Positions 30,013 through 57,384 of a stretch of DNA of 64,000 nucleotides are shown here, piece after piece. Where the stretch lies: NCBI RefSeq assembly GCF_003918875.1, contig NW_025766181.1, positions 434,001 to 498,000 of the forward strand, read 5' to 3'. The translations under genes and the position numbers were made by a program. This stretch comes from Haliotis rubra. Its lineage: Eukaryota. Each line of letters starts with the position of its first letter. Position 1 is the first letter of the stretch. The notes beneath the pieces were generated by a model, which did no database searches, was not told the DNA's origin, and saw nothing but the letters and a program-made list of their open reading frames with translations.

Positions 30013-30238
30013 CTGAAATAAATTAAAATAATCATATTACGGCTAACGTTTAATATGATCTCTGCATATATATCGTAATGCTTCTTTAAAATGAGACAGT
30101 CATTTCTAGCCTTTTTCCATTAGGTTGAATGGTGATGAAAGGCAATGACCTTGGGGTGTCAGCATGATGTTGGGTAAAAGTGTAAAGATATTTAGACTGA
30201 AGATGGTTAAACTCTCAGTGACCTACGTGTATATCACA

Positions 30239-30378
30239 GTGAGTGAGTGAGTTGGTTTTTGCGCCGTTATTAAGCAATATTCCAGCAACATCACGGCGGG
30301 GGACACCAGAAATGGGTTTCACACATTGTACCCAGGTGGGGAATCGAACTCGGGCCTTCGGAGTGACAAGCGAACGTA
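30239..30378 (-). mobile_element. SINE family A, 5'-truncated
   Basis: Family A body and tail. Confidence 0.85.
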
Positions 30379-31348
30379 TCAGAGACGTATGTAGACATGT
30401 ATGGAACTATCCCAGAACTGCTGAGTTTTCTCCTCTTTTCTTGCAATGCAACCAACCGTGCCAAATGTGGTCCACTGCAATCGGAGATGCACGTTTGTGT
30501 TACGAAGCCAATCATCTCTACAGATTTTCTGAATGTGTCAAGCCTATTGTGAATGCGTATAAAGATCCTCTCATTGACGGTAGCATGCAAAATACGTGTT
30601 TCTATCCCAGAAGTATTCTTTAAAATATTTTAGTCAGATTAGTCCTTTTAGTATGCATATGAAATTTGGAAGATCTGAGAGTATGGCAAAAATCTATTTA
30701 CTGGCTTCTGCAAACACTGACGATCTCGTTTAAGGCGAATATGGCTCATAACCATCGTAAATAAACTAACAATAGTAAAATAGATTTGGGTACGGTTGTG
30801 AAGTAATATTAATGTAGGGTATAAGAACGGGGCTTCACAAATATGATACCTACGATGTTCTTACGGTGTTGGTGTTGTTCGGCATTCGCAGACGGATGGT
30901 AATGAGATATGGTTTATTAAGTATGCTGTATCAACATTTAATACCTACAATTTACAATTAACAATAGTTCAAGGTATAACGTTCCCAGAGCATACCACAT
31001 GTATTTTGATAACCAGAAAAGTGTTGTCGTTTTCGCAAATAGTGAATTGGAGTATCAAATTAGTCTTCTTAAGGCTTGAGAACTGCTTTGTCGGTGGATA
31101 AATAATTTAAACGTAGGTGGCAAAATATATTTACATATACGGGGCATAGAAACTAAGAACCATTTTTTCTTGTATATGCAACTTTTGATGCTATAAGAAT
31201 GAAATAGCTACCAAAGACATGTATCACTCACTAATGAATGCTATCATGCATACAGTTTATAAAACAACAAAATTGAACCAAACTATCAAACAACGATGTA
31301 CAAATATAATCATTATGCTTGTACAAATACCATGGTTGTATGAAGAAA

Positions 31349-31472
31349 GGTGAGTGAGCGAGTGTAGTTTTACACCGTTTTTAGCAATATTCCAGAACTA
31401 TCACACCAGAAATGCTTCACACATTATATCCATGTTGGGAATCGAACCCGGGTCAAGGCGTGACAAGCGAAA
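31349..31472 (-). mobile_element. SINE family A, degenerate
   Basis: Family A tail and B box. Confidence 0.7.
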
Positions 31473-31740
31473 CAAAAATCAATAAAGTATTGATTGTGTA
31501 GGACCATGAAGCAGCAGTAAGATATCGATCCTTCGTGATTAGTTAATCAAATACACGCATCCTTTGCAAATGTATACGCAATTCACTTCCAAAAAACATT
31601 GCCTGCATTCCTATTATAAAGATAATGATCTTATGAAAACATTGTACGCGATCTAAGGTGATACTAACCTAAGTTGTTAAAACCTTGTGTAGATAAGAAC
31701 TGCATCACATCATTTGAAATGGGTCCATATTCCGTCGTAC

Positions 31741-31755
31741 CTGAGTAACCTCCGC
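31741..31755 (-). CDS. Candidate 15-nt micro-exon of the giant gene (GGGYS)
   Basis: atgcatttcag|GCGGAGGTTACTCAG|gtacga; symmetric phase 1-1. Confidence 0.4.
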
Positions 31756-31920
31756 CTGAAATGCATTTATGAATATTACAATTATACCGAGTGGCCAATG
31801 GTCAAATGAGGGACAATATGATGATGAAATGTCAACCTAGATCGGTCTCACTGAATACACGTTGGCATATTCAGACAGTCATTAGTCATGCTTTACTAAA
31901 TATGTTTTTCATTAAGCACA

Positions 31921-32085
31921 GTCAGTGAGTGGGTTTAGTTTTTCGCCGCTTTTGGCAATATTTCAGCAATATCGCGGCGGGGGACACCAGAAATTGGCTT
32001 CCCAGATTGTACATATGTGGGAATCGAACCCGATTGTTCAGCGTGACGAGCAAACGCTTTAACCACTAGGCTACCCCACTGCCCC
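31921..32085 (-). mobile_element. SINE family A
   Basis: Head, B box and tail. Confidence 0.88.
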
Positions 32086-32612
32086 GATGTTACTCTGGGT
32101 ACATAGGGGGTTAAAACAAGAAACACCCACTGTATATATGTGTGCATTTAGACCAGTAAAAAGAGCACCAGCTGTATGTATATTGCATTAACAAGGATCT
32201 TATGTCACCAAACGTAGGAGCATGTGTATCTGCACAGGTTGTGACCATACTGAACGACACAACATCCAATTCGTCATTTCTCGACTTGTGAGAATAACTA
32301 CACAGCTTGAATAGTACTCCATTCGTGGCCACACTGGTACCACTGTGTAAAACCCAACCATAGGGTTTATATTTTGAATGTGTTTTTCAAATCAAAATGT
32401 TCACTAAAGCCTGGTATACTGTCCTATGAAACTAGTCCACTTGGCGAGATCATGTCAGGGCTAATCCGACACAAAACGATTCGCAGTGCTTTATACTTCC
32501 AGATAAACATGTATAATTGTTCCAAGGAGCCGTCTTGGGTATTGTCAACACAACTATTTGTATTTTCAGTTTGGTTACTGTGTATCTAATTCCGATTGCA
32601 GGTTGCCAATAC

Positions 32613-32645
32613 CTTGTCCGTTCACAGCCGTATAGTCGAACAGAC
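32613..32645 (-). CDS. Candidate 33-nt micro-exon of the giant gene (GLFDYTAVNGQ)
   Basis: ctttgttcctatttccag acceptor, AAG|GTATTG donor, symmetric phase 1-1, open frame. Confidence 0.6.
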
Positions 32646-32996
32646 CTGGAAATAGGAACAAAGAATGCTAAGTTACACTCAAGCATCAGAACGTATATGT
32701 AAATAGTCTGAGGGTGACATGTGTTACACGTTCAGTGAAACATATGCGTGATATATAACATGGGCTCTCTATGACTTTTTAATAACATCAAATCTCCCAC
32801 GTCGTCCTTGCGGTCGGCATGTTTAATATCTTGCCTTCACAAATATTTCAATATTTCACTGGGAAAACATCGTAATAATTCTAAACGTTTGAAAGAGACA
32901 AGGAATCTTTTGATGGTATTTGTCGCACTGAAAACAAAATATATGTTTACATACCTTAAGGATGATGCCAGCACCATACTTTATGAAGGTACAAAC

Positions 32997-35900
32997 CTGG
33001 TAAGGTTGGGGTGTGACCCCCTCTACTAGGAGTGGGAGGGATAATCGAGGGATGGGAAGGAGGAGATGCAGGGGAAGAGGCATCAGTGCTTGTAGAAAAT
33101 TGTCGGTCTGTTCCTGTGTGTGCTCCGCCTTGTTTGCTCTTTTCACCACCCCCATTTAACCTCCAATTTTGTTTTTGACTTCCCCCCATACCCTTCATGA
33201 TCCCAGACAACGGTTGCATTTCATGCAATGTCTTATGACCTGTGAATCCTTGATGTTTTGAACTTGAAATACCATTTTCTGAATGTGCTCCCATCTCAGT
33301 ACTAACTGCTGCGCGATGCAGTTCAGGTGTGCCTACCTCAGCATTGTGACCAGCTCTATTGTTAGATGATACTCTATTGGCAGGGATTCTTCTCTGGTTC
33401 CCAAATTCGTTTGCATATGTCTTGAAAGGGTCTGTAGGACTCAACCCAGACGCACGTGTCCTCCTATTATTTGAAAAAATAGCTTTCACCTCAACCTCAC
33501 TCTCATTCAGTTCTTTAGATGTCTCGCTAGGTTCTTGTGGTACAGGGTTTACAGAATTGTAACCGGAATCTCGTGTGCTGAAAATGTACATGTGAGGAGC
33601 ACGTTGTGTATCAGAACTTCCATCAGACTCTGTACGTAAAGCAATTGTGTCAAGAGACATTTGTCCGATTGGAGTAGGCGCTACTTTCCTTGCTAAATAC
33701 GCTTTAAGCAGCGAATGACTTATATGCATATCAATACAAGTTTCCGTTTTGTTGCATTTTGAATCCGAACTGGTACCAAACCCGTTGTTTTCCTGTTGGA
33801 AGCTGCTTTGGCTTTTTGTCTGTGGTTTGGACTGTTTTTCACCATGGAGGACAGATGCTTCACCACGAGAAGCTCCAGTAGTGGATATTTCTATTTCAAC
33901 CTTGGGTGCTCCATACCTTTGTACGTAGTGCTGTATTTTGTTGTCTTGCACTATGGCATCTCCATTCGTACTCAAGGGCTTGTTCACTGTATTCACATGA
34001 TGTCTATGGGACTTGGACTCTTGACTGGAAGCTTCTTTATTGGGTGAGTGTTGGAGGATATTGATGGAATCAGCTACGGTGTGAGGGACAACGGGGTGGT
34101 TAATGTTATTCTCTGATAATGGAACTGACTGTCCCTCTACAGGTTTGGGAGTGTACTTGTAGGATTCTGTGGGAGTGAAAGCATATCCTTTCTGAGATGA
34201 TTGTTCTTGTAACATGTGCGCTGAGTGGTGTCTTGTATGAAATAATGTTTCCAGTTTAGAATGTATTTTATCTGTGCCTGTTGGTGTTTCCTTATTAGTC
34301 ATATTTGTTTTCAAGGTTGCATTTATTTTCTGTTTATCGATACAGTTTGGAGTGTGACATTTAGATAAAGATGGAGAAATCTTGCTGAATATCTGTGTAG
34401 ATACTTTATTCTTTCCCTGATTGATTCTACTGCTATTGCTAGTTGACTGTGAATATATATTGGTTATACTCTCTGCTGGAGTAACGGTACGTCCATATGA
34501 AGAAAGTACACTTTTTGAAACGGTTTCAGAATTGCTATTTGTAGGTAATGGCTGTCCGTCTAAGTGTAGAGCGGCGCTGGGCGATGTATTATGTGTCGAA
34601 AGGGAATTTCGTGTTGTGGCACTGATCATTTTAGCTGTGCATGTTTTCGTGGTGCAGTTTGCTGAAGTAACTGACTGTGTTGGAACACTGACATTGCGTT
34701 CAGCATCAAGCTGATATACTGCAGTATTTGGTTTGTTAAGGGTCTGTGTATGATGTGATTGTTTTCCGCTTTGCACCTTTCTGTGATTGTGAATGTCTTG
34801 CATTGTTGTATTAGCATCTTTACCTTCAGAAACAGTGTTTGACTGATCCAACCCTGACGTTTGTTGAACAGTGTTACTTGCTGACGCAACTGTTTGGATG
34901 AAAACAGTGTTAACATGGGGATGTGTTTCACCATAGGATGTAGCTGTTCCCGTCGATTTTAGCTTCCCTGTGGCCTTCGGTGAAGCATTGCTGTCTAAAT
35001 ATGCCTGAACCTTGGCATCACTTATATGCTTATCTATGCAGGTTACTGGAGAGCATTTAGTGTTAGGAAGTTGACCTGATCGTGTTAGATGTTTCTCAAG
35101 AGTTACACCGCCTAATGCACCACCATCACCATCTAAAGACTTGACGTTCAAGGGAACAGGAGTAGCACTGGGCCCATTTTGACCTGCTATAGTGCTGTAA
35201 AAAGATGAAGCAAAACCTGGCAGAATACGATTTGGGGTATTGCTTGTACCCTCGAGATGGCTCAAAGGCTCTTTCACAGAGGTTGTTGTCTTGTCTTGCT
35301 TTCCAATTGCAGAATGTTGTGCAGATAGACTGTGAGCATCAGTAGATTCAAATGTTAGTCTTTCAGGGATGATTGGGTTGTCTCTAGTTTGTGCGTTAAC
35401 AATTTCGGGTAAGGAGGGACTGGCTGTTTCAGTGTGTGGGGTTGGATTTCCTGGCTTATTAGAGACACGTTGAATGTTTGTTGCCGTGTATGTATGATGT
35501 GCTAGAAAACTGGACGACTTTGTGGTCGAATGCGAATTGGCAGATACAGTGTTTTGTGACTCGAATGTTGTCTGAGAGCCACTGTTTCTATGTGTACCGG
35601 TAGTTCCTGTGTTTGTGGATGCGTATGTAGAGTCAGCTGGGATATTTGCAAAACTTATGTGTGAATGTGTTCTCGTATTTCCAGTGTTTCCCAGTGCATG
35701 CCTGTGTTGGATGGTATACCAGTAGTTCCAGTGTTTCCCAGTGCACGTGTGGAATGTTCTAGGATAGTAGACGAGCCTGAGTTGGATGGTATACCAGTAG
35801 TTCCAGTGTTTCCCAGTGCATGTGTGGAATGTTCTAGGATAGTAGACGAGCCTGAGTTGGATGGTATACCAGTAGTTCCAGTGTTTCCATGTGTGGAATG

Positions 35901-38900
35901 TTCAGTGCACGTTGTGGAATGTTCCAGTGTTTCCCAGTGCACGTGTGGAATGTTCTAGGATAGTAGACGAGCCTGAGTTTGATGGTATACCAACAGTTCC
36001 AGTGTTTCTCAGTGCATGTGTGGAATGTTCTAGGGTAGTAGACGAGCCTGATTTGGAAGGGATACCAGCAGTTCCATTGTTTGCCCGTGCATGTGTGGAA
36101 TGTTCTAGGGTAGTAGACGAGCCTGATTTGGAAGGGATACCAGCAGTTCCAGTGTTTCCCAGTGCAAGTGTGGAATGTTCTAGAGTAGTAGACGAGCCTG
36201 AGTTGGAAGGGATACCAGCAGTTCCATTGTTTGCCCGTCCATGTGTGGAATGTTCTAGGGTAGTAGACGAGCCTGAGTTGGAAGGTATACCAGCAGTTCC
36301 AGTGTTTCGTGGCACTGATAGAGAATTAGTTGGGATATTCGAGGAGCGTGTGCTACTAGTTGCAGTGTTTGTGGATGGATGTGGAGAATTTGTTGGAACG
36401 TTACTGCCTGTGTTTAAATCTTTATATCCATTGTTTGTTAAGGGGTGTATAGGATGTGAAGGAATATTAGGTCCGGTAATTGATGAAACCGTAGTTCCAG
36501 CGTTTGTAGACGGATCTGCAGGATTTGTTGTAATGTTTGTAGGCCCTGTGTTTAAATGTTTGCTAGCAGTTTCTTCGGTTTTCAGTGGATCGGTAGAGTG
36601 GGTTAGTATATTAGTAGACACTGTGCCGAAATGTCCACCCGCAGTGTTATTGTCTATTGGTGGGAATGTAGGATGTTTAGGAGCATTAGAAGAACCAGTG
36701 TTTGAATATGTGCTAGCTGTTACAACCTTTATAGACGGATCCCCTGTATATGTTTTTGATTGTTCAATACCATTTTCAGTGTTTGGTGGTGGGTTTGTAG
36801 AATGAGATTGAATGTAAGAAACAGTATTTGAATGTATACCAGAAGTTCCAATGTGTCTTGAAGGGAATGTAAGATGTGTTGGAACATTCGAAGAACCAGT
36901 GTTTGAATATGTGCTAGCTGTTACAACCTTTATAGACGGATCCCCTGTATGTGTTTTTGATTGTTCAATACCATTTTCAGTGTTTGGTGGTGGGTTTGTA
37001 GAATGAGATTGAATGTAAGAAACAGTATTTGAATGTATACCAGAAGTTCCAATGTGTCTTGAAGGGAATGTAAGATGTGTTGGAACATTCGAAGAACCAG
37101 TGTTTGAATATGTGCTAGCTGTTACAACCTTTATAGACGGATCCCCTGTATGTGTTTTTGATTGTTCAATACCATTTTCAGTGTTTGGTGGTGGGTTTGT
37201 AGAATGAGATTGAATGTAAGAAACAGTATTTGAATGTATACCAGAAGTTCCAATGTGTCTTGAAGGGAATGTAAGATGTGTTGGAACATTCGAAGATCTC
37301 TTGTTTGAATTTGCAACTTTGCTGTTTGTTGGCGGGTTTGTTGAGCTTATAAGAATGTTCGAAGATACTGTATTAGAATGTGCACTGGCACTTTCAGTAT
37401 ATGTATCAAAAGTATGTGTTGGAAAATCAAACAAAATAGTGTTCGATCGTGTGGTAGCCGTTCTAGCGTTTGTGGGCGGATTTGTAGAATGTGTTTGAGA
37501 ACTGGAAAATACTGTGTTTGAATGTATACTGGCAGTTGCAATATTCCCGGATGTGTCTGACGGATATGTTGGAATGTTAGAAGAACCTGTGTTGGTTGAC
37601 TGATATAAAGTATGTGTTGAAACACTGGAAGAGCGACCGCTTGAATGCGTGCTAGTGTCTGTTGTCCCGAGCGTTTCAATTACTTGACTATTTGTCGAAC
37701 TTTGGCTGGAATGTATACTAGAAGTGGAAGAATCCATGTTTGAAAGTGTACTATCAGTTCCAGTGTTTATGGACGGGTCTGTAAGTGCTACAGTTTTTGT
37801 CGAAACAAAGTTCGAATGAGGGTTATCTGGACCACTGTTTGTTGGTGGATATGTTGGAAAATTAGGAGCATCTTTGTTGAAATGTTCTCTATCAACCTGA
37901 GGATTAGTTGGGTGACTAGGATTGTGCGGACTGTTAGCAGAACTTTCAATTGAATGTACACTAGCACTACCAGTGTTTGTAGTCCGGTGTGTAGTGTGAA
38001 TATTAGGAGGACCAGATTTACTTGATAACGAATTGATTGTATGCAAGGATTTTGTGTCGCTGTTCACTGAACTCATTGATGAAGAGACCTCATTTACATT
38101 TAAAGTGGATATTTCATTCGTAATAAAGTCGGTTTTGTTGTTTGTAGGTAAGGATGGTACTGCGTCTAGTTGCATATTCCCTATTGTCTTAGGCGAAGCA
38201 TTGCTTGTCAGATATGCATATAGTTTTCCTTGATTAATTGTTTTGTCGATGCAGATTTCTGTCACACATTTCGAAGCTTTAAGTGTTTGATTAGAATTTT
38301 GTTTTGTTTGATTGGAATGGTGTTCCTGCAGGACATTGTTTGAGGTATTACCGCTTGTGTCTTCCGGTGATTGAGAATAATTGGTGTCCTGGATAAGTCC
38401 AGATTGTGTCTGATTATGGAATATTTTGTGGCTGGAACTGTCTGATGCAACTGATAGCCCATGTGTTCGGTTTTGTGGTTCACTTTTTGTCAAGTTTGCC
38501 TTGAATTTGTCTCCAGTGATATGGTTGTCTGTTGTGGGATTTGTAGTATCAGGTCCGGATTTTGGTGGAGCGGAAGTATGTTGTGCAAATATTTGTAAAG
38601 TAACTGTAGAAGTATGTCTACCAGACAGCTGTGTGTTCAGTGGCGTGTCAGTGTCGTGTGTCCAAGATTGAGAAGAATCCTGGTGGGTGCTTGCTGGTTG
38701 ACTATTCATTGGTTTGAATACTGGCGTTGTTGGAATATGTTCAGAGGAAAGATCATAAGTGCTTGTTTCTAATGGCTCATATGCTGGATTTGTTGGCATG
38801 ATGGAAGAAACAGTGTTTGGATCTGAAATGGCAGTTTCAGTGTTTGTTGGTGCAAATGTAGGATGTGGGGACATATTATAAGAAGTTGCTTTGGAATGTG

Positions 38901-41900
38901 TGCCATCAATCCCAGTGTTTTTTGTTGCCTCTGTAGAATGTGTTGGAATATCAGATACGCCGAAATGTGTATGCATACCTGCAGTTGCAGAGTTTATTGT
39001 TGCAAATATGGGATGTGATGGGATATTAGACGAACCTGATTTTGAATTTGTACTTGCAGTTTCAATATTTGTTGCGTATGTGAGGTGTGATGAAGTTGGA
39101 GAAGAATCAGTGCTCGAATGTGTTCGATTAAAATCAGTGTTTGTTGGCGGGTGAGTGGGATGATTTGGAATATTAGCAGACCCTGGATTTGAATGTGCAC
39201 TAGTAATACCAGTGTTTGCAGTCAGATGTGCAGTGTGAATATTAGGAGGACCAGATGTACTTGATGCCTCCATTGGTTGCAAGGGATTTGTTTCGTATTG
39301 CACTGGACGCAGTGATGAAGTGGATTCGCTTACATTTGAAGTGGATATTTCTTTCGTAATAGAGTCGGTTTTGTTGTTTGTAGATATGGATGGTACTGCA
39401 TCTAGTTGCATATTCCCTACTGCCTTAGGCGAAGCATTGCTTGTCAGATATGCATATAGTTTTCCTTGATTAATTGTTTTGTCGATGCAGATTTCTGTCA
39501 CACATTTCGAAGCTTTAAGTGTTTGATTAGAATTTTGTTTTGTTTGATTGGAATGGTGTTCCTGCAGGACGTGGTTGGAGGTATTACCGGTTGTGTCTTC
39601 CGGTGACTGAGAATAATTAGTGTCCTGGATAAGTCCAGACTGTGGTTGTTGGTGGAATGTATTGTGGATGGAACTGTCTGGTGCTAGTGGTATTCCATGT
39701 CTTGGGTTTAGTGATTCGTTGTTTGTCAAATTTGAATGTGTTGGGATACCAGAAGCCCCGGAATTTGTATGTATACCTGCAGTTGCAGGGTTTGTGGCTG
39801 CGTATGTGGGATGTGATGAGATATCTAACGAACTTGTTTTGGAATTTGTACTAACTGTTCCAATATCTGTTGTAACAACAGAAGACCATGTATTTGAATT
39901 TGTGCTTTCAGGTGCAGGATTTGTTGGCCCGCTTGGAGGTTGAGTTGGCAGAATATAAAACCCTGATGTTGAAAGTATGCCATTATTGCCAATATTAGTC
40001 GGGGGGTATGTAGGATGTATTGGAAGATTAGAAGCCTCTGAGTTTAAATGTGTACTACCTCGTAAAGGGTCTGCTGTTGTGTATGTTGGATGAGTCAGAA
40101 GAACAGACGAACCTGTGTTTGAATAAATACTATCAGTTGCAGGATGTGTTAGAGGAATAGACGAATGTGTACTAGCTGTTCCAGTGTTGGTTGGTGTGTG
40201 CATTGGATGAGACAGAAAAAAAGAAGAATCTGTGTTTGGATAAATACTATTCGTTGCCTGATTTGTTGGCGGGTATGTTGGATGAATAGGAGACCCTGTG
40301 TTTGAACGTGTACTACCTTTGTCAACGCTCGTTGGCGAGTACTTAGGTTGTGTTTGAATATTAGAAAACACTGTGCTTGATTGTTTACTAGCAGTGGTTG
40401 TGATTGCTGGTGCGTATGTAGAAAGTGATGGAATATCGGACGAACCTGTTTTTGAATTTTCACTATTTCCAGGAAATGTAAGAATCGAAGACCTTGTGTT
40501 TGAATAAATAGTATCAGTTCCAATGTTTGCTGCCGTGTTTGTGGGATGTATTGGATCAATAGGAGAACCCAATCTGGAATGCGTACTAACGCTTTCAGTC
40601 TGTGTTGTCAGGTATGGATAATGTGCTGGATTATCAGAGGGACTCGTGTTGGAATGAGTTCTTTCAGATTGTGTTGTTAGGTTTATATGAGGCACTGGAG
40701 TATTGAATAAGCGAGTGTTCGATTGTGTACTGACACTCTGTGTTGAAATATCAGAAGAATGTGCATTGTCAGTTCCAGTGTTCGTTGGCACGTGTGGAGC
40801 ATGTGCCAGATCATTATTAGAACCGGTGTTTAATTGTTTTGGCGTTTGAATATTACGTCCAGTGTTTAAAAGTGGATATGTTTCAGACGAATCAGTGTTA
40901 GATGTTAATATATCTATCAGATGCATATTTTTAGTGTTGTGTGTAACGGATTTCAATGATGATGTGAGGGAAGTGGCTACATCGTTCGTAATAGCGGCGG
41001 TACTGGATTTTGTTCCTATGGATGTTAGTGCATCTACTTGCCTATTCCCTATAGCCTTAGGTGAAGCATTGCTTGTCATATATGTCCTGAGTTTAGTTTC
41101 ACTTATATTCTTTTCTATGCAGGTTTGTGTCACACATTTCAGTGTTTGATGTGAAGTACTACCTTTTGTGTCTGATGATGCTGGAGGTGTATTTGTGTTC
41201 TGGGCACGTCCAGAGTGTGTTTGAGTATAGGGTTCTAAATTATCAGGTGATGCTGATATGCCATGAGTTCTCGGGGTAATGTCCAACCAAGGATGCCCAG
41301 GTGCAGCTCTGTCTACAGATGCAGGGGTTATACCAGTGGGTATTTCTTTGAGTGTATCCTGGCTACGAGATGATTTACGACTTTGATTGGCGCCAACACC
41401 ATGTACTACACTGTGTGAGGAAGAGGACTGACGTATGCCATCTCCTTGGGCTAATGGGATCACAAAAGGAAGTACCTGGAGGTCAGTCTGAAGTGCCTCT
41501 CGGGATGAACTAATGCTGTTACCAGCTGCTTTGTACGAAACGGCATTAATGTTGGTATTTGTACTTGACGATGGTGGCGCTTCTAATTGTAAACTCCCTA
41601 TAGCCTTTGGGGAAGGATTTTTTGTCAAATATTCTTTGATCTTCTTTGAACTGATGTGCTTGTCTATGCAGATTACAGTAGCGCACTTGGGAGTTGGGAT
41701 TGTTCCAGTTGGGATTTCTTTTGCTGATTTGGAATTGTTTTCCAAACTGAATTTGCTCGATTTTCTAGCCGCAGGGCCTAAATGCACTTGAATGTTATTT
41801 ATACTTTGGGATAAAAAGTTGGATGAAGTGTCAACTCCTTCTCTGATGACAGTGCTACCCTCAGAAACAGACTGCTTATTATCAAAACTAGAATGAATTT

Positions 41901-44900
41901 CCCCTGAGTTCTGAGTGTCCTCTGACTGACTGACGGCAGGCCACTGTGAAGGACACTACCCCTTGTTACAGCATCTTGTGACGAGTAAAATGCACTGCTT
42001 TTGGTGAACTGAGGAACATCATGTGGTGTTGGTTCAAGAGTATTATGGTATACAGGTAAATGGATATCGATTGTATTTGCTTGTGACACTGATTGACTTT
42101 GTAACGTTGCTGCTAAGGCTTTAGTGTTGCTATTTAAAGCTGATTGTTTTGAATTAGACTGTATTTTAGGTAGTGATACTGGGGATGTTGTGGCAGTGTG
42201 CGTGGCGGTGTCGTTTTGTAAGTTTTGAATTTCGGAATTGATAGTGTTTGAAATGTTGGAAGTGAACGTATTGATAAAGGATTTGTTGTTCGATACTGCT
42301 TGAGGAAAGGTGGAATTTGTGTTGCGTCCTATAGTGTGTGTGGTGGACAGGGACGATGTAGGGAGTACATGCGTAATTTTGGGTGATTTACCTTGAGGAA
42401 AGCTGATAAACTCTTGATGTCCAGTTGCAAAGGCAGGAACGGTAGTCTCTGAGATAACACTTGGAAGACTTGAGTCATACATTTGATTTGACTTCTGCTG
42501 TTGTCCTGCTCCAAACTCTATGGGTTGAAACACATTGAAACTGTTCAGGGGTGTTCGTGTCCTGCTTTGAATGGAGGGTGTCTTCTGAAATGACAAGGAC
42601 GTATCTGATCTGACGGCCATCCTGGCTCGCTCTGTTGCAGATGCATTTTGGTCTTCGGTGATTCTATTACTTATCCCCTTGGGAAAAGTGTCCTTTGTTT
42701 TCGATCCTGGAACTGCGGCTATTCTTATATCGATTGGATCGTTTCCAACAGATGTATCGGCTTTCTGTGCACTAGAAATAGAGCTTGGTTTGTGATTAGT
42801 ACCAGTTTCAGTTTTAGTGACGGGGTTGATCTCAAAAGTAGTTTGGACTGAGGCTCCACGGGCCCGGGTAGAGGAGGGTAATACTGGATACGCATCTACT
42901 TCATTCAATACAGGAAGGCGGGGATTTGGGCGGTTAGAAGGAGTGGATACAGTGTTTGCATTTGTTTTGTTAATATAAAATCCACTACGGGTATTTTCTA
43001 TGATTGTCATTTTGGAACTTTGCTTAGTAGCATTAAAAGTGTTAGTATTTTCCAGGACATGGTTTCTCTGCGGTACTTGGGTGGGGTTAACGTTACCTTG
43101 GCCGGCCAAAGGATCATAATGTGTGTTTGTTGATTGTGAATCCTGGCTTCTACTGTGCAATAACAAACTCAGAAATTCCTTCTCGAGACTTGTGCCCTCA
43201 CTACCCCTTTGTAGTATGTTACGCGTTCCATCAGAGCCTTGTTCCGTGACCGCTTCTTTTTCCAAATGATTATTGCTGGCAAGTCCGGAGTCCTGTGCAA
43301 GGAACACAGGCGGTATTGTGTAGGTTGACTCGCCTATTGCCACTGTTGCAATATTTGGTCTCGTCGACTCAATATCTGCGTGCTGACTACTTGTAACTGA
43401 TAGTCCTTGACCTCCCAACAAATCAAGGTTACCATACAGGTTACCATTTGATGACATATCTTGTATTATAGATTGTCCAGCTGGTGATACCAGTCCTTGG
43501 TTTGACACAATGTCCGAAGCGCCCTGCTGGGTGCGAATTTCTTGTACGCCTAGATGCCCATTAAAGCTATCGTGTCCTTGTCCTGTTAAACCAGACAGCA
43601 CAGTGTTATGAAAAGAGTCTCGTGTTTCACCAGTTGCACCGTTCATTCCAAATCCGCCAGCGACAATTGGCATTAGGCCTTGCAAATCTACCTTTTTTGA
43701 AGATTGTCTTTCTACTGTGCCCAACTGATCAGCACCACCTGCAGCCACAGGACTGACTCCTAAATATTGATTCAGGTTAGTTTGGTCATTAATAAATTGA
43801 GGGATTCCCACTAACATGGAACTGGCTTCTGATGTATGCCCGACAGACTTTTCAGCTAATTCTTCTTTGATCTTATTTCTGCTGTTTGCAGTATCTTGTT
43901 GCACTGATCTATATGTAGATATTCCGTTGTTTGTTGTGGTCTGTGTCAGGTCATGTAAAACTTGTGTTCCAGGAGAGGTAGTCATATCCTTAGCCCGATA
44001 TTGAGTATTGGATGATGTGACTCCTTGATGTAATGTCTCCTCCCGTGTTAATTGCAGTCCATGAGATGTTGGAACGTCTACAGTTCTGTACTCTCCGCTT
44101 GCTAATGTGACTACTTGACTAGGTGTTAGTTGCTGCCCAGCAGATCCTGACAAGTCTACAGCTCCGTATTGTCCACTTGTTGTTGCCACATGATTAGAGG
44201 TAGATTTTTTTCCACCAGATTTTCGAATGTCGACAATCCTGTACTGTTCACTTGTAGTGCCAGCTTCACCAGGTGCCAATTGCTGCCCAGCAGATGTTGC
44301 CAAGTCTACAGTTCCATGCTGACCACTTGTTGATGTGGGGCCTTGAGTAGATGAAGGTTGGTGTCCAGCTGGAGCTGGAAAGTCCAGAGGTCCGTACTGG
44401 CCATTGATTGAAGCAGCTTGGTTAGATATAGAATGCTGTCCTCCAGATGCGGAAAAGTCTCGAGTTGTGTACTGTCCGCTTGTTGAGGCAGCTTCATTAG
44501 ATGCTGATAGTTGTCCACCAGATGTCAACAAGACTCCATTTGTGTACTGTCCACTTGTTGAGGCAGCTTGATTAGACATAGATTGTTGTCCACCAGATGT
44601 TGACAAGTCTACAGCTCCGTACTGTCCACTATTTGAGGCAACTTGGTTAGATGCCGATTGTTGTCCTTCAGATGTAAACCAGTCTCCATTTGTGTACTGT
44701 CCACTTGTTGAAGCAGCTTGATTAGACATAGATTGTTGTCCACCAAATGTTGACAAGTCTCCTGTTGTGTACTGTCCGCTTGTTGAGGCATCTTGATTAG
44801 ATATAGATTGTTGTCCACCAGATACGGACAAATCTCCAGTTGTGTACTGTCCGATTGTTGAGGCAACTTGATTAGACATAGATTGTTGTCCACCAGGTGT

Positions 44901-47900
44901 TGACAAGCCTCCAGTTGTGTACTGTCCGCTTGTTGAGGCAGCTTGATTAGACATAGATTGTTGTCCACCAGGTGTTGACAAGCCTCCAGTTGTGTACTGT
45001 CCACTTGTTGAGGCAGCTTGATAAGACATAGATTCCAGTCCACCAGGTGTTGACAAGCCTCCAGTTGTGTACTGTCCGCTTGTTGAAGCATCTTGATTAG
45101 ATATAGATTGTTGTCCACCAGATACGGACAAATCCCCAGATGTGTACTGTCCGCTTGTTGAGGCAGCTTGATTAGACATAGATAGTTGTCCACCAAATGT
45201 CGACAAGTCTCCTGTTGTGTACTGTCCACTTGTTGTGGCAGCTTGATTAGACATAGATGGTTGTCCACCAAATGTTGACAAGTCTCCAGTTGTGTACTGT
45301 CCAATTGTTGAGGCAGCTTGATTAGACATAGATTGTTGTCCACCAGGTGTTGACAAGCCTCCAGTTGCGTACTGTCCGCTTGTTGAGGCAACTTGATTAG
45401 ATGTAGATGGTTGTCCACCAAATGTCGACAAGTCTCCAGTTGTGTACTGTCCGCTTGTTGAGGCAGCTTGATTAGACATAGATTGTTGTCCACCAGGTGT
45501 TGACAAGCCTCCAGTTGTGTACTGTCCACTTGTTGAGGCAGCTTGATAAGACATAGATTCCAGTCCACCAGGTGTTGACAAGCCTCCAGTTGTGTACTGT
45601 CCGCTTGTTGAGGCAGCTTGATTAGATATAGATGGTTGTCCACCAAATGTTGACAAGTCTCCAGTTGTGTACTGTCCACTTGTTGAGGCAGCTTGATTAG
45701 ACATAGATTGTTGTCCACCAGGTGTTGACAAGCCTCCAGTTGTGTACTGTCCACTTGTTGAGGCAGCTTGATTAGACATAGATTGTTGTCCACCAGGTGT
45801 TGACAAGCCTCCAGTTGTGTACTGTCTGCTTGTTGAGGCAGCTTGATTAGACATAGATTGTTGTCCACCAGGTGTTGACAAGCCTCCAGTTGTGTACTGT
45901 CCACTTGTTGAGGCAGCTTGATTAGATGTAGATTGTTGTCCACCAAATGTTGAGAAGTCTCCAGTTGTGTACTGTCCGCTTGTTGAGGCAGCTTGATTAG
46001 ATATAGATTGTTGTCCACCAGATGCGGACAAGTCCCCAGATGTGTACTGTCCGCTTGTTGAGGCAGCTTGATTAGATATAGATTGTTGTCCACCAAATGT
46101 TGACAAGTCCCCAGTTGTGTACTGTCCGCTTGTTGAGGCAGCTTGATTAGATATAGATTGTTGTCCACCAGATGTTGACAAGCCTCCAGTTGTGTACTGT
46201 CCACTTGTTGAGGCAGCTTGATTAGACATAGATTGTTGTCCACCAGGTGTTGACAAGCCTCCGGTTGTGTACTGTCCACTTGTTGAGGCAGCTTGATTAG
46301 ACATATTAGATTGTTGTCCACCAGATGTCGACAAATCTCCAGTTGTGTACTGTCCACTTGTTGAAGCAACTTGATTAGACATAGGTTGTTGTCCACCAAA
46401 TATCGACAAGTCTCCAGTTGTGTACTGTCCGCTTGTTGAAGCAACTTTATTAGACATAGATTGTTGTCCACCAGATGTTGACAAGTCTCCAGTTGTGTAC
46501 TGTCCGCTTGTTGAGGCAACTTGATTAGACATAGATTGTTGTCCACCAAATGTCGACAAGTCTCCAGTTGTGTACTGTCCACTTGTTGAAGCAACTTGAT
46601 TAGATGATTGTTGTCCGATTGTTGTGTACTTCAGATGTATAACCAGTCTCCAAGTTTGTGTACTGTCCACTTGTTGAGGCAGCTTGATTAGATAGATTGT
46701 TGTCCACCAGATTGTTGACAAGCCTCCACTGTCAGATTGATTAGACGATTGACAAATCTCCAGTTGTGTACTGTCCACTTGTTGAGGCAGCTTGATTAGA
46801 TATAGATTGTTGTCCACCAGATGCGGACAAGTCCCCAGATGTGTACTGTCCGCTTGTTGAGGCAGCTTGATTAGATATAGATTGTTGTCCACCAAATGTT
46901 GACAAGTCCTCCAGTTGTGTACTGTCCGCTTGTTGAGGCAGCTTGATTAGACATAGATTGTTGTCCACCAGGTGTTGACAAGCCTCCGGTTGTGTACTGT
47001 CCGCTTGTTGAGGCAGCTTGATTAGACATAGATTGTCGTCGACCAGATACGGACAAATCTCCGGTTGTGTACTGTCCAATTGTTGAGGCAGCTTGGTTAG
47101 ACATAGATTGTTGTCCACCAAATGTTGAGAAGTCTCCAGTTGTGTACTGTCCGCTTGTTGAGGCAACTTGATTAGACATAGGTTGTTGTTGTCCACCAGA
47201 TACGGATAAATCTCCTGTTGTGTACTGTCCGCTTGTTGAGGCAGCTTGATTAGATATAGATTGTTGTCCACCAGATGCGGACAAGTCCCCAGATGTGTAC
47301 TGTCCGCTTGTTGAGGCAACTTGATTAGACATAGGTTGTTGTCCACCAAATGTCGACAAGTCTCCAGTTGTGTACTGTCCGCTTGTTGAGGCAACTTGAT
47401 TAGACATAGGTTGTTGTCCACCAAATGTCGACAAGTCTCCAGTTGTGTACTGTCCGCTTGTTGAGGCAACTTGATTAGACATAGGTTGTTGTCCACCAAA
47501 TGTCGACAAGTCTCCAGTTGTGTACTGTCCGCTTGTTGAGACAACTTGATTAGACATAGGTTGTTGTCCACCAAATGTCGACAAGTCTCCAGTTGTGTAC
47601 TGTCCGCTTGTTGAGACAACTTGATTAGACATAGGTTGTTGTCCACCAAATATCGACAAATCTCCAGTTGTGTACTGTCCACTTGTTGAGGAAACTTTAT
47701 TAGATATAGATTGTTGTCCACCAGATGTTGACAAGTCTACAGCTCCGTACTGTCCACTTGTTGAGGCAACTTGGTTAGATGCCGATTGCTGTCCTTCAGA
47801 TGTAAACCAGTCTCCATTTGTGTACTGTCCACTTGTTGAGGCAGCTTGATTAGACATAGATTGTTGTCCACCAGATACGGACAAATCTCCAGTTGTGTAC

Positions 47901-50900
47901 TGTCCGCTTGTTGAGGCAGCTTGATTAGATATAGATTGTTGTCCACCAGATGCGGACAAGTCCCCAGATGTGTACTGTCCGCTTGTTGAGGCAGCTTCAT
48001 TAGACATAGATTGTTGTCCACCAAATGTCGACAAGTCTCCAGTTGTGTACTGTCCGCTTGTTGAGGCAGCTTGATTAGATATAGATTGTTGTCCACCAGA
48101 TGTCGACAAGTCTCCAGTTGTGTACTGTCCGCTTGTTGAGGCAGCTTGATTAGACATAGATTGTTGTCCACCAGATGTTGACAAGCCTCCGGTTGTGTAC
48201 TGTCCACTTGTTGAGGCAGCTTGATTAGACATAGATTGTCGTCGACCAGATACGGACAAATCTCCGGTTGTGTACTGTCCACTTGTTGAGGCAACTTGGT
48301 TAGACATAGGTTGTTGTCCACCAAATATCGACAAATCTCCAGTTGTGTACTGTCCGCTTGTTGAGGCAACTTTATTAGATATAGATTGTTGTCCACCAGA
48401 TGTTGACAAGTCTACAGCTCCGTACTGTCCACTATTTGAGGCAACTTGGTTAGATGCCGATTGTTGTCCTTCAGATGTAAACCAGTCTCCATTTGTGTAC
48501 TGTCCACTTGTTGAGGCAGCTTGATTAGACATAGATTGTTGTCCACCAGATACGGACAAATCTCCAGATGTGTACTGTCCGCTTGTTGAGGCAGCTTGAT
48601 TAGATATAGATTGTTGTCCACCAGATGCGGACAAGTCTCCAGATGTGTACTGTCCGCTTGTTGAGGCAGCTTGATTAGACATAGATCGTTGTCCACCAAA
48701 TGTCGACAAGTCTCCAGTTGTGTACTGTCCGCTTGTTGAGGCAACTTGATTAGACATAGGTTGTTGTCCACCAAATGTCGACAAGTCTCCAGTTGTGTAC
48801 TGTCCGCTTGTTGAGGCAACTTGATTAGACATAGGTTGTTGTCCACCAAATGTCGACAAGTCTCCAGTTGTGTACTGTCCGCTTGTTGAGACAACTTGAT
48901 TAGACATAGATTGTTGTCCACCAAATGTCGACAAGTCACCAGTTGTGTACTGTCCACTTGTTGGGGCAATTTGATTAGACATAGGTTGTTGTCCACCAAA
49001 TGTCGACAAATCTCCAGTTGTGTACTGTCCGCTTGTTGAGGCAACTTTATTAGATATAGATTGTTGTCCACCAGATGTTGACAAGTCTACAGCTCCGTAC
49101 TGTCCACTATTTGAGGCAACTTGGTTAGATGCCGATTGTTGTCCTTCAGATGTAAACCAGTCTCCATTTGTGTACTGTCCACTTGTTGAGGCAGCTTGAT
49201 TAGACATAGATTGTTGTCCACCAGATACGGACAAATCTCCAGTTGTGTACTGTCCGCTTGTTGAGGCAGCTTGATTAGATATAGATTGTTGTCCACCAGA
49301 TGCGGACAAGTCCCCAGATGTGTACTGTCCGCTTGTTGAGGCAGCTTGATTAGCATTGATTAGACATAGATGTGTACTGTCCGCTTGTTGAGGCAGCTTG
49401 ATTAGATATAGATTGTTGTTCACCAGATGTTGACAAGTCTCAGATGTGTACTGTTTGAGGCAACTTGGTTAGATGCCGATTGTTGATGCCAGCTCCATTT
49501 GATTGTTGAAGCAGATTAGACATAGATTGTTGTCCACCAGGTGTTGACAAGCCCCCAGATGTGTACTGTCCGCTTGCTGAGGCAGCTTGATTAGACATAG
49601 ATTGTTGTCCACCCGATGTTGACAAGCCTCCAGCCTGTGATTGTTCTACACCAAGTCCCATGTTCTGATATCTACTAGCAGATACATCAACTTGATTCCC
49701 ACTCGCTGCCCTGTCTTGCATTGTATTCTTCACATCACTGGATGTTGCTCCCTGAACTGATGGCACATCTTTGGATGTGCCCAGTGTGTTAATGCCTTGC
49801 ATATCCTTTGAACTAGTTTTGATAATATTTTTGCCAACAACAGCTCCAACAGGCTGTGCATCCAGTCTTCCGTTGAAGTTAACATCTTGTAAGACATTTC
49901 CTTGGTAGGATGATGTGGTCTGTGCTTCAGTGTTCGCTGCTGCTACTGGCTGTGCATCTCTATTAGGTGTTGTAACTGGTTTCATGACATTGACTGAGTC
50001 AACTATGCCAGAAGTATACTGATGGTCAGTTCCTGGTCCTTGACGAGAATATATTTTTTGTGTAGGTTGATACGTTTGTTGGTCGTATACTGAGCCACTT
50101 ACTTCCTTTGGGGTAGAATCAAAGACAACGTTTTGCGTAGATTCGTAGAGATTTGGTTCGGAAGATATTAGATTAGGTTCGTTGTGGGTTTGTCCGACCT
50201 GTGAAGCCATGGAGTGAACAACTCCTTGCATATCCTTTGGCTGAGTAATGCTGTGTTGTGTTGAGCCTTGTAGAACGGCTTTGGTTCCTGAACGTCCGTA
50301 GTGTTCAGAGTTATATTGTGGTTTGGATGATATATGGTCTGGTCGTGTTGATGACGTTCCTCGTTGAGATTGAACGTTTGACTGGACCAGTAGCCCTTGT
50401 TCCGATCCGTGATTTGCCATCTGCTGCTTTTGATAACTAGTTCCACGAGGGTTATTCATTGGTAAACCAAGTGTCAGTGAGCCCGGTTCTCTTGCGTTGG
50501 CAGTGGTGCGCCTTTGCGAGCCTATATTTGTTTGTGTGTTACCTCTGATGTCTTGATATTGATAAGATGAACCAGAATTCATTACGTCTGGATGTCTAGT
50601 ACCTTGTGTTTTGTCGTATGAGCTCACAACGCCTTCGACTTGCATATTCACTGGGATTCCATCAACTAAAGCAACTCTGGGAGAGTTCACTCCAACATCA
50701 ACTGGGTTTATTATAAAACCGACTGGCATGTCCAGACTGCCTGTGACATGTCTCCTGGGAATACGAATCTGTGTGTCGAATGAAAATTTGGGTGTCGACA
50801 GAAGTGGTGTCGCTACTTGCACCTGAACTCTGTTATAATTAGCTGGCCGAGTTGAACCCGTGTTGGATGCTACACCGAAGCTCCCTCTTGGGTAATCGAA

Positions 50901-50932
50901 ACCCCCTTTGGCTGTTGTTCTCACTGGACCAA
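32997..50932 (-). CDS. Giant secreted repetitive (mucin-like or structural) protein, ~17.9-kb exon (~5,980 aa) with apparent frameshifts
   Basis: Acceptor tgttctttttcag (phase 1); overlapping or abutting ORFs 49440-51002, 46871-49423, 41799-46895, 35902-41787, 35655-35942, 32956-35277 with continuous composition; donor CAG|GTTTGT (phase 1); frame breaks near 49340-49500, 46600-46910, 41915-41957, 35890-35925 and ~35700. Confidence 0.85.
35680..36310 (-). repeat. Coding tandem repeat, 75-bp/25-aa unit (NTGTAGIPSNSGSSTTLEHSTHALG), ~8 copies
   Basis: Period 75 (35943 vs 36018). Confidence 0.9.
36689..37295 (-). repeat. Coding tandem repeat, 201-bp/67-aa unit x3, near-perfect
   Basis: GAAGAACCAGTGTTTGAATATG at 36689, 36890, 37091. 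Confidence 0.92.
37990..39705 (-). repeat. Intra-exonic duplication (~37990-38470 vs ~39225-39705, offset 1236)
   Basis: QSGLIQDTNYSQSPEDT...KASKCVTEICIDKTINQGKLYAYLTSNASPK occurs twice. Confidence 0.9.
44080..49640 (-). repeat. Coding tandem repeat, 75-bp/25-aa unit (STSGQYTTGDLSTFGGQQSMSNQAA), ~70 copies
   Basis: Read directly; degenerate towards 44080; 675-bp higher-order period. Confidence 0.97.
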
Positions 50933-55913: not shown

Positions 55914-56150
55914 CTGGCAGTGCTCTGTTCCAGGTACCTGGGGACCTGTGTGGTGGCTGTGACACAGGAACAATGGGTGTGAACATGGGCGGCGGAGAAG
56001 TCCATGGTGACTGTAGCGGTAGTACTGGGAAGCTGTACATTGGTATTCCCGGTCTTGGCATGATCAGAGGAATAGGGGGAAGGGTCCCCTGAAAGGGGCC
56101 TTTATAGAGCTGTGATATTTGACGAAAGGGTGATGGAGTGAAGGAGGGAG
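55914..56150 (-). CDS. Giant secreted protein, Pro-rich 237-nt exon (SPSFTPSPFRQISQLYKGPFQGTLPPIPLIMPRPGIPMYSFPV...RALP)
   Basis: Acceptor ctttttcgtttctgtttcag, donor CAG|GTAAGG, phase 1-1, frame-consistent with both neighbouring exons. Confidence 0.82.
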
Positions 56151-57293: not shown

Positions 57294-57384
57294 ATGGGGA
57301 TGGTGAAAGCCGCATAGGAATGTACGTGCCATTTATTAAACATGTTAGACATGCTAACACGAATATATACACAAGCATATCCAT
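57294..57384 (-). CDS. Giant secreted protein, signal-peptide exon (MDMLVYIFVLACLTCLING|TYIPMRLSPSP)
   Basis: Acceptor ttttatttgcag (exon starts 57395), GCAATGG start context, hydrophobic signal, donor T|GTAAGT, phase 1. Confidence 0.82.

What the first reader, a model, noticed from the sequence alone, without database searches (positions are those of the whole stretch)
44080..49640. ~70 x 25-aa S/T/G/Q repeat with one regularly placed Tyr per unit
Seen: STSGQYTTGDLSTFGGQQSMSNQAA, almost free of Lys/Arg and poor in Pro, with a near-invariant GQY and a variable aromatic position. This differs from Pro-rich mucin PTS repeats. Inference: it could form a beta-solenoid or cross-beta fibre (silk-, amyloid- or ice-nucleator-like register), or present Tyr for DOPA or dityrosine cross-linking as in marine adhesives.
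Basis: partly seen in the sequence, partly recalled or inferred. Interest (0 to 1): 0.75.

Follow-up and report, generated by a model that had tools for sequence, protein, structure and literature searches.

The report
Abalone giant secreted protein's Tyr repeat
This is a real array of about 74 copies of a 25-residue, proline-poor, uncharged Ser/Thr/Gly/Gln unit with one tyrosine, inside a giant abalone-only secreted protein; whether it folds into a beta-solenoid or is a sticky mucus-like polymer is still unsettled.

Summary
On the minus strand, 49640-44100 holds about 74 head-to-tail 75-nt units. Sixty-two of them lie in two clean blocks and encode STSGQYTTGDLST[S/F/P]GGQQS[M/I]SNQ[A/V]A. G4 and Q5 are invariant and Y6 nearly so (62 of 64 anchored units); K+R is 0.6% and Pro 2%.

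The array lies in the giant third coding exon of a roughly 29-kb gene (ATG 57384, stop 28562). The gene has a signal peptide and no Pfam domain. Its only relatives among 1.8 billion cluster representatives are two isoforms of one Haliotis asinina gene, auto-named 'serine-rich adhesin for platelets-like'. That ortholog has only about 27 units, and roughly eight of them lack the STSGQY hexapeptide.

In this Nanopore-based H. rubra assembly the reading frame breaks in two indel-ridden zones of the array and once more downstream. I think these are probably assembly errors.

AlphaFold2 gives a beta-solenoid (pLDDT 78) for ten H. rubra units but only 58 for the irregular H. asinina array. This is a published false-positive class for AF2. 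A bacterial beta-helix adhesin shares the 25-residue period, but the match is weak (hhalign 13%).

Unit positions evolve at very unequal rates, yet pN/pS between units is about 0.7.

My best reading, at about 40%, is a cohesive, probably glycosylated polymer block with regularly spaced aromatic and hydrophobic stickers. A folded solenoid gets about 25%. Tissue, expression and Tyr chemistry remain unknown. The same gene was noted earlier in this scan for other features.

The parts
57294..57384 (-). First coding exon: ATG at 57384 and signal peptide (hydrophobic core, small residues before the predicted cut). Donor GT follows 57294; an AG acceptor upstream of the ATG implies a further 5'UTR exon.
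   Evidence: tblastn of the H. asinina ortholog; sequence and splice sites read. Signal peptide judged by eye; no predictor was run.
55914..56150 (-). Second coding exon, Pro-rich segment, with canonical AG/GT borders.
   Evidence: 88% identity to ortholog residues 32-105; borders.
49641..50932 (-). Start of the giant third coding exon: about 430 codons of non-repeat, Cys-free sequence. The ATG at 51002 listed by the ORF finder is intronic.
   Evidence: Acceptor before 50932. 64% identity to the ortholog. Single copy in the genome. Held at about 99%, 96-97% and 93% DNA identity in contigs of three organisms.
49340..49640 (-). First units of the array, including frame-break zone 1: units of 71, 51, 67 and 52 nt. 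Net shift is +1.
46937..49339 (-). Clean block B: 32 units (31 of 75 nt, one of 78 nt) in one open frame, with a 9-unit higher-order repeat.
46590..46936 (-). Frame-break zone 2: units of 76, 75, 52, 56 and 88 nt. Net shift is +2. One unit is a 19-aa-type short unit carrying +1 and -2 indels.
   Evidence: Same-species contig depth is 8.7 here against 141 for single-copy sequence.
44337..46589 (-). Clean block C: 30 units in one open frame that continues into non-repeat coding sequence.
44100..44336 (-). Three to four degenerate terminal units (GQH, EQY and GQY variants).
   Evidence: The same degenerate tail is present in the ortholog.
41802..44099 (-). Non-repeat continuation of the same exon. 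A third frame break lies at about 41900-41945, at a (GTCA)3 run.
   Evidence: The H. asinina protein reads straight through this point.
28562..41787 (-). Rest of the gene: S/T/P/N/H-rich (PTS-like) sequence, paired-Cys motifs, further repeats and the C-terminal exon (30013-28565, stop 28562-28564).

Best explanation
The array is a fast-expanding tandem-repeat block in a giant, abalone-specific, signal-peptide-bearing secreted protein that has no recognisable globular domain.

I propose that it works as a long, uncharged, strongly hydrated and probably O-glycosylated polymer segment. Regularly spaced 'stickers' sit between Gly-containing hinges (G4, G9, G15-G16): Tyr6, Leu11, Met/Ile20, Ala/Val24-25 and, in H. 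rubra, Phe14. Together with the many Gln/Asn/Ser side chains they would give many weak chain-to-chain or chain-to-surface contacts. This would make the secretion cohesive, as a gel or glue rather than a mere lubricating spacer. The block may become beta-rich when concentrated.

Shown: the array, its frame, the gene model, the ortholog, the copy-number difference and the position-specific conservation.

Inferred: secretion into mucus or adhesive, glycosylation, the sticker role and any beta transition.
For: - Secreted, domain-less giant protein: signal-peptide exon; no Pfam family on any part of the H. rubra or H. asinina protein.
- Polymer-like composition: S+T 34%, G+Q+N 36%, net charge about -0.03. 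On the charge-hydropathy plot it sits on the disordered side of the boundary (0.421 against 0.425).
- VNTR-like evolution: about 74 units here against about 27 in H. asinina; 9-unit duplications; pN/pS 0.74 between units, no lower than the out-of-frame control at 0.66.
- Some positions are nevertheless held: D10 and Q23 invariant, S12/G15/Y6 at 90% or more, position 11 100% hydrophobic through L/V/M/F/W, position 20 80-96% hydrophobic.
- The same unit subtype (GQYGAVDLS) is kept in both species.
- Roughly eight H. asinina units lack the Tyr hexapeptide, which a loose polymer tolerates easily.
Against: - There are no expression, tissue, glycosylation or rheology data. No RNA run was on record for the stretch.
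- Low Pro and the strict 25-residue length in H. rubra are unusual for a disordered mucin block and fit a folded repeat at least as well.
- AF2 models a solenoid.
- The frame is broken three times in this assembly, so the H. rubra copy could be non-functional.
Confidence: 0.4

Rival explanations
1. The array folds constitutively into a long parallel beta-solenoid with one 25-residue rung per unit (about 70 rungs, roughly 35 nm). A stacked Tyr ladder and Gln/Asn/Ser ladders would form a rigid rod or fibre-forming module.
For: - AF2 on ten units gives an all-beta, 25-periodic model with pLDDT 77.8 and pTM 0.75.
- The model aligns to solved solenoids: CsgA 8c50 Z 20.9, SufD-type Z 17-18 at 2.5-3.0 A, MpAFP Z 14.3.
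- 56 of 64 in-frame units are exactly 25 aa.
- Gly is conserved at three sites, charge is almost absent and Pro is low.
- The two best non-orthologous hits among 1.8 billion cluster representatives are bacterial proteins with a 25-residue period. One carries Pfam Beta_helix and aligns gap-free over 10 units with 8 of 25 consensus positions shared.
Against: - AF2 makes confident false solenoids for 41% of random perfect repeats and for mucin 22 (PMC11795689).
- My alignment consisted mainly of the array's own shifted blocks.
- The H. asinina array scores only pLDDT 58 / pTM 0.51.
- Roughly eight of about 27 H. asinina units are 6 residues shorter.
- hhalign probability to the bacterial beta-helix is 12.7%.
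- No Pfam Beta_helix, Curlin or Ice_nucleation match at E<=10 and no PDB sequence match.
- Positions that are apolar in the bacterial rung (10, 18, 25) are D, Q and A here.
- pN/pS between units is about 0.7.
Confidence: 0.25
2. It is an ordinary, densely O-glycosylated, disordered spacer. The conserved residues reflect only shared descent of the units and recent duplication, and Tyr has no special role.
For: - Mean unit identity between species (0.65) equals the identity of the non-repeat flanks (64%).
- pN/pS between units is 0.74.
- Copy number differs nearly threefold between species.
- Tyr-less units are tolerated in H. asinina.
- The rest of the protein is PTS-like.
Against: - Unequal rates among positions (p 6e-6), with invariant D10/Q23 and class-conserved hydrophobic positions 11 and 20 that use several different residues.
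- Pro 2% and S+T 34% are poor for a PTS domain (definition in PMC1552070).
Confidence: 0.2
3. The regularly spaced Tyr is the functional point. It is oxidised to DOPA or coupled to dityrosine, giving evenly spaced covalent cross-links as in resilin-like or cured adhesive networks. This could coexist with any of the readings above.
For: One Tyr per unit, present in 62 of 64 H. rubra in-frame units and 19 of 20 H. asinina full units, always in the G-Q-Y context.
Against: - No chemical data.
- Tyr is only 4 mol%, and Lys/Arg, which accompany DOPA in mussel foot proteins (my knowledge), are almost absent.
- About a quarter of H. asinina units lack the Tyr hexapeptide.
- No chitin-binding or other resilin-type domain.
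Confidence: 0.1
4. In H. rubra the gene is a recently inactivated pseudogene, and the frame breaks are real. This concerns the state of this copy, not what the array does.
For: Three frame breaks, one of them in non-repeat sequence. No H. rubra protein for this locus was found in the protein collections.
Against: - Open frames of 850, 1698 and 1961 codons persist on either side of the breaks.
- Indels cluster in two zones of about 350 nt whose bases otherwise match the consensus, while 62 other units have no frame-shifting indel.
- Same-species contig depth in zone 2 is 8.7 against 141.
- The assembly is a Nanopore/Illumina hybrid meta-assembly of a highly heterozygous genome (PMC6774278).
- The H. 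asinina gene is intact.
Confidence: 0.2

Closest known systems
Haliotis asinina XP_067650662.1 / XP_067650664.1 ('serine-rich adhesin for platelets-like' isoforms X1, X2)
   Same: Ortholog: same exon order, signal peptide, Pro-rich exon and N-terminal region (64% identity). It has the same 25-aa unit (consensus 24 of 25 identical), the same degenerate tail and the same paired-Cys motifs.
   Different: It has only about 27 units, roughly eight of them 19-aa units lacking STSGQY. It has almost no Phe at position 14, and its units are more diverged (0.60 against 0.79 mean identity). The name is automatic and compositional; no function is published.
Mucin PTS tandem-repeat (VNTR) domains
   Same: A large single exon of tandem repeats in a secreted S/T-rich giant protein, with fast copy-number change and no sequence conservation outside a narrow clade. 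Mucins are a functional, convergently evolved class (PMC9417175).
   Different: Pro is 2% and G+Q 31%. There are conserved hydrophobic and Tyr positions. No VWD, SEA, C8, TIL or CK domains are present (definition in PMC1552070).
Bacterial 25-residue parallel beta-helix adhesin repeats (metagenomic inverse autotransporter P0003; Pfam Beta_helix PF13229)
   Same: Identical 25-residue period. The alignment is gap-free over 10 units, with T2, S3, G4, G9, L11, S12, Q17 and N22 shared.
   Different: phmmer E is 4e-4 and hhalign probability 12.7%. The abalone unit is far more polar at the rung's apolar positions, and it gives no Pfam Beta_helix hit of its own. This is a resemblance, not membership.
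Curli CsgA and ice-nucleation-protein type polar beta-solenoids
   Same: S/T/G/Q/N/A-rich, low-charge, low-Pro short repeats. Ice-nucleation units also carry one conserved Tyr (my knowledge). The AF2 model's best structural match is a long CsgA (Z 20.9).
   Different: No sequence-profile match. Foldseek TM is only 0.15. Those proteins are bacterial, and the fold here is unproven.
Sericin-type silk glues and barnacle cp19k-type [S/T/G/A]-rich cement proteins (comparison from my own knowledge, not tested here)
   Same: Ser-rich, Gly/Thr/Asn/Tyr-containing, Pro-poor repeats of secreted glues that are soluble coils and turn beta-rich on drying or curing.
   Different: No homology. Those proteins carry charged residues, and their unit lengths and organisms differ.

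Membership tests
Mucins (PTS-domain glycoproteins) | A domain rich in Pro, Thr and Ser (PMC1552070). | tested here: not met
   The array has S+T 34% and Pro 2.1%. Downstream parts of the same protein are PTS-like (S+T 30-38%, Pro 5-12% in the ortholog), so the protein may qualify but this block does not.
Mucins (PTS-domain glycoproteins) | VWD (gel-forming) or SEA (membrane) domains. | tested here: not met
   No Pfam family on any part of the H. rubra or H. asinina protein.
Mucins (PTS-domain glycoproteins) | Dense O-glycosylation of the repeat. | not testable with these tools
   Needs glycoproteomics of the native protein.
Beta-solenoid repeat proteins (parallel beta-helix, curli, ice-nucleation type) | Constant rung length along the array. 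| tested here: inconclusive
   In H. rubra 56 of 64 in-frame units are exactly 25 aa. H. asinina mixes 25-aa and 19-aa units.
Beta-solenoid repeat proteins (parallel beta-helix, curli, ice-nucleation type) | Match to a family profile (PF13229, PF07012, PF00818) or to a solved chain. | tested here: not met
   None at E<=10 in Pfam. No PDB sequence match. hhalign to a bacterial beta-helix gives 12.7%.
Beta-solenoid repeat proteins (parallel beta-helix, curli, ice-nucleation type) | A confident solenoid prediction that is robust to natural sequence variation and to controls. | tested here: inconclusive
   pLDDT 77.8 for H. rubra against 58.2 for H. asinina. This is a known AF2 false-positive class. 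Permuted-unit controls could not be submitted.
Mussel-type DOPA adhesive proteins | High Tyr/DOPA content with abundant Lys/Arg and a basic pI (my knowledge of mfp-1/3/5). | tested here: not met
   Tyr 4.1%, K+R 0.6%, net charge slightly negative. DOPA itself was not testable.
Resilin-like dityrosine elastomers | Gly/Pro-rich Tyr-bearing repeats plus a chitin-binding R&R domain (my knowledge). | tested here: not met
   Pro 2.1% and no chitin-binding domain. Dityrosine was not testable.
Bacterial serine-rich repeat adhesins (source of the NCBI name) | Short Ser-dipeptide repeats, a binding region and an LPXTG wall anchor in Gram-positive bacteria (my knowledge). | tested here: not met
   This is a spliced animal gene with GT-AG introns. 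The unit is 25 aa and the C-terminus has no anchor motif. The name reflects composition only.

The most novel reading that the evidence does not exclude
An animal makes a roughly 70-rung, almost uncharged polar beta-solenoid with a stacked Tyr ladder as part of a giant secreted glycoprotein. It would be a eukaryotic extracellular rod or fibre module convergent with bacterial 25-residue beta-helix adhesins, curli and ice-nucleation proteins, and its length would be tuned by repeat copy number between abalone species.
Probability: 0.2. Interest if true: 0.8.

Novelty: new variant of a known kind. Interest (0 to 1): 0.42.

Why it matters
Abalone attachment, locomotion and surface mucus matter for aquaculture and biomaterials, but the large structural proteins of gastropod secretions are mostly unknown because their repeats break assemblies and resist trypsin.

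This locus gives a complete gene model for one such protein and a well-defined unit that is easy to synthesise. It also offers a natural experiment: about 74 units against about 27, with and without the Tyr hexapeptide and with and without Phe14.

If the block is a sticker-and-spacer gel former, it is a simple template for uncharged underwater adhesives or hydrogels. If it is a true beta-solenoid, it would be a rare animal example of that architecture.

It is also a concrete case of how AlphaFold2 confidence on near-perfect repeats should be discounted.

Tried and rejected
1. Pfam on all long ORFs and on the ortholog found nothing.
   - At E<=10 the array gave DUF3660 (66.8 bits) for block B only.
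   - I rejected it. It is one 19-residue stretch of a plant receptor-kinase family, with the score summed over repeats, and it is absent from block C and from H. asinina.
2. Word-index protein searches found nothing beyond the ortholog itself. Queries were the 850-aa repeat ORF, the N-terminal ORF and the ortholog's residues 107-1240.
3. The exhaustive search found only the two H. asinina isoforms plus two marginal bacterial hits.
4. ESM Atlas feature searches of the array and of the N-terminal 120 aa gave no usable lead.
5. The PDB sequence search with the repeat profile gave only a chance hit at E 0.097.
6. Shell-matrix role:
   - The H. laevigata nacre/prismatic proteome lists an A/Q/S/T-rich 'similar to mucin' entry, but its peptide is not from this protein.
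   - None of five repeat motifs or six N-/C-terminal peptides occurs in the paper's 28 supplementary files.
7. No paper in the library holds the unit's motifs or links the NCBI name to abalone.
8. Expression:
   - The single sequencing-run search returned no RNA run, so the tissue is unknown.
   - Laying short-read contigs could not resolve the frame breaks, because repeat contigs are 70-140 nt and map to several units.
9. DNA of the H. asinina locus could not be fetched, so there is no dN/dS for that array.
10. The ATG at 51002 as start codon is rejected. It lies in the intron before the acceptor at 50932.
11. The second open frame over the same repeat (ORF 44609-46594) is rejected as coding. 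The ortholog and both flanks use the STSGQY frame.
12. The permutation control for the bacterial match (z 4.1) is not counted as significance, because the target had been chosen as the best hit for the real sequence.

Full report
**What is there**

The repeat is real and lies on the minus strand.
- Tandem Repeats Finder reports 75-nt arrays at 44394-46616 and 46751-49361 with 88% matches and no indels within each.
- Anchoring on the codons for G-Q-Y/H gives 68 anchors, almost all exactly 75 nt apart, from 49571 down to 44174.
- Across 64 in-frame units the consensus is STSGQYTTGDLSTSGGQQSMSNQAA.
- G4 and Q5 are invariant and Y6 is 97% conserved. Position 14 is S/F/P, position 20 M/I/A and position 24 A/V.
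- Composition is S 20.6, G 16.4, Q 14.7, T 13.1, Y 4.1, P 2.1, K+R 0.6%.
- By length the array is about 74 unit-equivalents:
  - 32 units in block 46937-49339;
  - 30 units in block 44337-46589;
  - about ten damaged or short units in two zones;
  - three to four degenerate units at the end.
- The upstream block has a 9-unit higher-order repeat.
- The unit occurs nowhere else in the genome. Other hits are S/T-rich matches at 23-31% identity.

**The gene around it**

The only real relatives among 1.84 billion cluster representatives are two isoforms of one Haliotis asinina gene. They are XP_067650662.1 (5472 aa) and XP_067650664.1 (2331 aa), auto-named 'serine-rich adhesin for platelets-like'.

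Mapping the long isoform onto the window and reading the splice sites gives this model:
- a first coding exon at 57384-57294 with a typical signal peptide;
- a Pro-rich exon at 56150-55914;
- a giant exon starting at 50932 that contains about 430 non-repeat codons, the whole array and the following sequence.

The H. asinina protein reads straight through the apparent ORF boundary near 41.9 kb. The exon therefore runs on to about 35.9 kb. The last exon ends with the stop at 28562.

The ATG at 51002 is intronic. No part of either protein matches a Pfam family. After the signal peptide the only cysteines are nine CxxxxC pairs far downstream. The protein is a secreted, domain-less, low-complexity giant of roughly 6,300-6,600 codons.

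**Which genome**

G000 has 1,378,282,171 bases in 2,855 contigs. That is the published blacklip abalone (H. rubra) assembly of 1,378,265,264 bp in 2,854 scaffolds plus 16,907 bp (PMC6774278). This agrees with earlier notes of this scan. The assembly is a Nanopore/Illumina hybrid meta-assembly of a highly heterozygous animal, polished with Racon and Pilon.

**Frame breaks**

The frame shifts by +1 in 49330-49570 and by +2 in 46590-46936. It shifts once more at about 41900-41945, at a (GTCA)3 run in non-repeat sequence.

In the two array zones the units are 51-88 nt long. They carry deletions of 4-24 nt and one 16-nt insertion, while their remaining bases match the consensus closely. The other 62 units carry no frame-shifting indel. 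One damaged unit is recognisably a 19-aa-type short unit with +1 and -2 indels.

Same-species short-read contigs give depth 8.7 over 46561-46721 against 141 for the single-copy N-terminal exon. Holes also occur over clean units, so this is only suggestive. One contig lacks the extra base at 46908 but could come from a sister unit.

Open frames of 850, 1698 and 1961 codons persist around the breaks, and the ortholog is intact. I put about 70-75% on assembly error and about 20% on real, recent inactivation.

**Evolution**

The H. asinina array has about 27 units: 20 full units and roughly eight 19-aa units that lack exactly the STSGQY hexapeptide.

The two consensus units are identical at 24 of 25 positions. 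Mean unit-to-unit identity between species (0.65) is the same as for the non-repeat flanks (64%), so the shared consensus by itself shows common descent, not strong selection.

Within H. rubra pN/pS between units is 0.74, no lower than an out-of-frame control at 0.66.

Position-specific constraint is nevertheless visible in the older H. asinina array:
- non-consensus counts over positions 7-25 range from 0 (D10, Q23) to 13;
- the spread gives chi2 57, df 18, p 6e-6, which is crude because the units are not independent;
- position 11 is hydrophobic in every unit of both species, using L/V/M/F/W;
- positions 20, 24 and 25 are 75-98% hydrophobic.

A unit subtype (GQYGAVDLS) is shared by both species.

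Contigs of two further organisms hold the N-terminal exon at about 96-97% and 93% identity, and also hold repeat-unit words.

**Structure**

AlphaFold2 on ten H. rubra units used an alignment of the array's own blocks plus four H. asinina blocks. It gave an all-beta model with strict 25-residue periodicity, pLDDT 77.8 and pTM 0.75.

The model is a parallel beta-solenoid:
- Foldseek's best match is a long curli CsgA (E 1.9e-4 but TM 0.15);
- the exhaustive aligner gives CsgA Z 20.9, SufD-type helices Z 17-18 at 2.5-3.0 A, and an antifreeze beta-helix Z 14.3.

This cannot be taken at face value. AF2 returns confident solenoids for 32 of 78 random perfect repeats and for human mucin 22 (PMC11795689). 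My alignment also reinforces the periodicity.

The natural test was the irregular H. asinina array, folded the same way. It gave pLDDT 58.2 and pTM 0.51.

The two marginal non-orthologous hits of the big search are both bacterial proteins with a 25-residue period. One is an inverse autotransporter with a Pfam Beta_helix region. It aligns gap-free over ten units and shares 8 of 25 consensus positions. However:
- hhalign gives only 12.7% probability;
- the abalone unit has D, Q and A where that rung is apolar;
- no beta-helix, curlin or ice-nucleation profile matches the array at E<=10.

The charge-hydropathy value is borderline (0.421 against a boundary of 0.425). The solenoid therefore remains possible but unproven.

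**Function**

Nothing here shows tissue or chemistry.
- No RNA run was on record.
- The protein is not in the H. laevigata shell proteome files.
- No paper holds its motifs.

On composition, architecture and evolutionary behaviour I favour a cohesive, hydrated, probably glycosylated polymer block with regularly spaced Tyr/Leu/Met(/Phe) stickers (0.40). After that come a constitutive beta-solenoid (0.25), a plain glycosylated spacer (0.20) and a mainly covalent Tyr cross-linking role (0.10). The last could combine with any of the others.

It is not a classical PTS mucin block, a mussel-type DOPA protein, a resilin or a bacterial serine-rich adhesin, by the features tested.

**Novelty and score**

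The gene is present but unstudied in public annotation of one sister species. The array is a lineage-restricted, Pro-poor, uncharged, Tyr-bearing variant of the secreted tandem-repeat theme. Interest is moderate. The unit is unusually regular and experimentally tractable, and the solenoid reading would be striking. The present support for that reading comes from a method known to over-call exactly this fold.

Noticed in passing
window 41900-41945 (minus strand): A frame break in non-repeat coding sequence at a (GTCA)3 run. H. asinina reads straight through here, and H. rubra has about 50 extra bases. So the two long ORFs (41799-46895 and 35902-41787) belong to one exon.
   Followed up: partly
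window 51038-51200: Contig depth jumps from about 141 to more than 10,000-189,000 in all four runs, with many loose ends. This is a very high-copy interspersed repeat inside the intron just upstream of the giant exon.
   Followed up: no
window 53460-54056 (minus strand): A 198-aa ORF with a Cys/His-rich tail that looks like the C-terminal part of a non-LTR retrotransposon protein, inside the intron between exons 2 and 3. It has no Pfam hit.
   Followed up: partly
window about 35905-36300 (minus strand): A second, unrelated 25-aa repeat (about five units with a T-L-E-H-S-T motif) lies at the end of ORF 35902-41787. Upstream of it is a triplicated unit of about 66 aa. Another first-stage note (s1-344982) already flagged this.
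   Followed up: no
window 44609-46594, 46741-47721, 47737-48396, 48412-49071 (minus strand): A second reading frame over the same repeat stays open for 219-661 codons and reads like a leucine-rich repeat. It is a by-product of the unit's codon make-up, interrupted once per 9-unit higher-order repeat, and is not the coding frame.
   Followed up: yes
window 13343-15837: Overlapping ORFs on both strands and extreme AT skew (0.68) surround four masked or gap N runs (13374-14666). This is a simple-sequence region.
   Followed up: no
window 50974 (minus strand, intron before exon 3): Organism C carries a 1-nt insertion here. This fits the reading that the stretch is intronic rather than the start of the protein.
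   Followed up: partly
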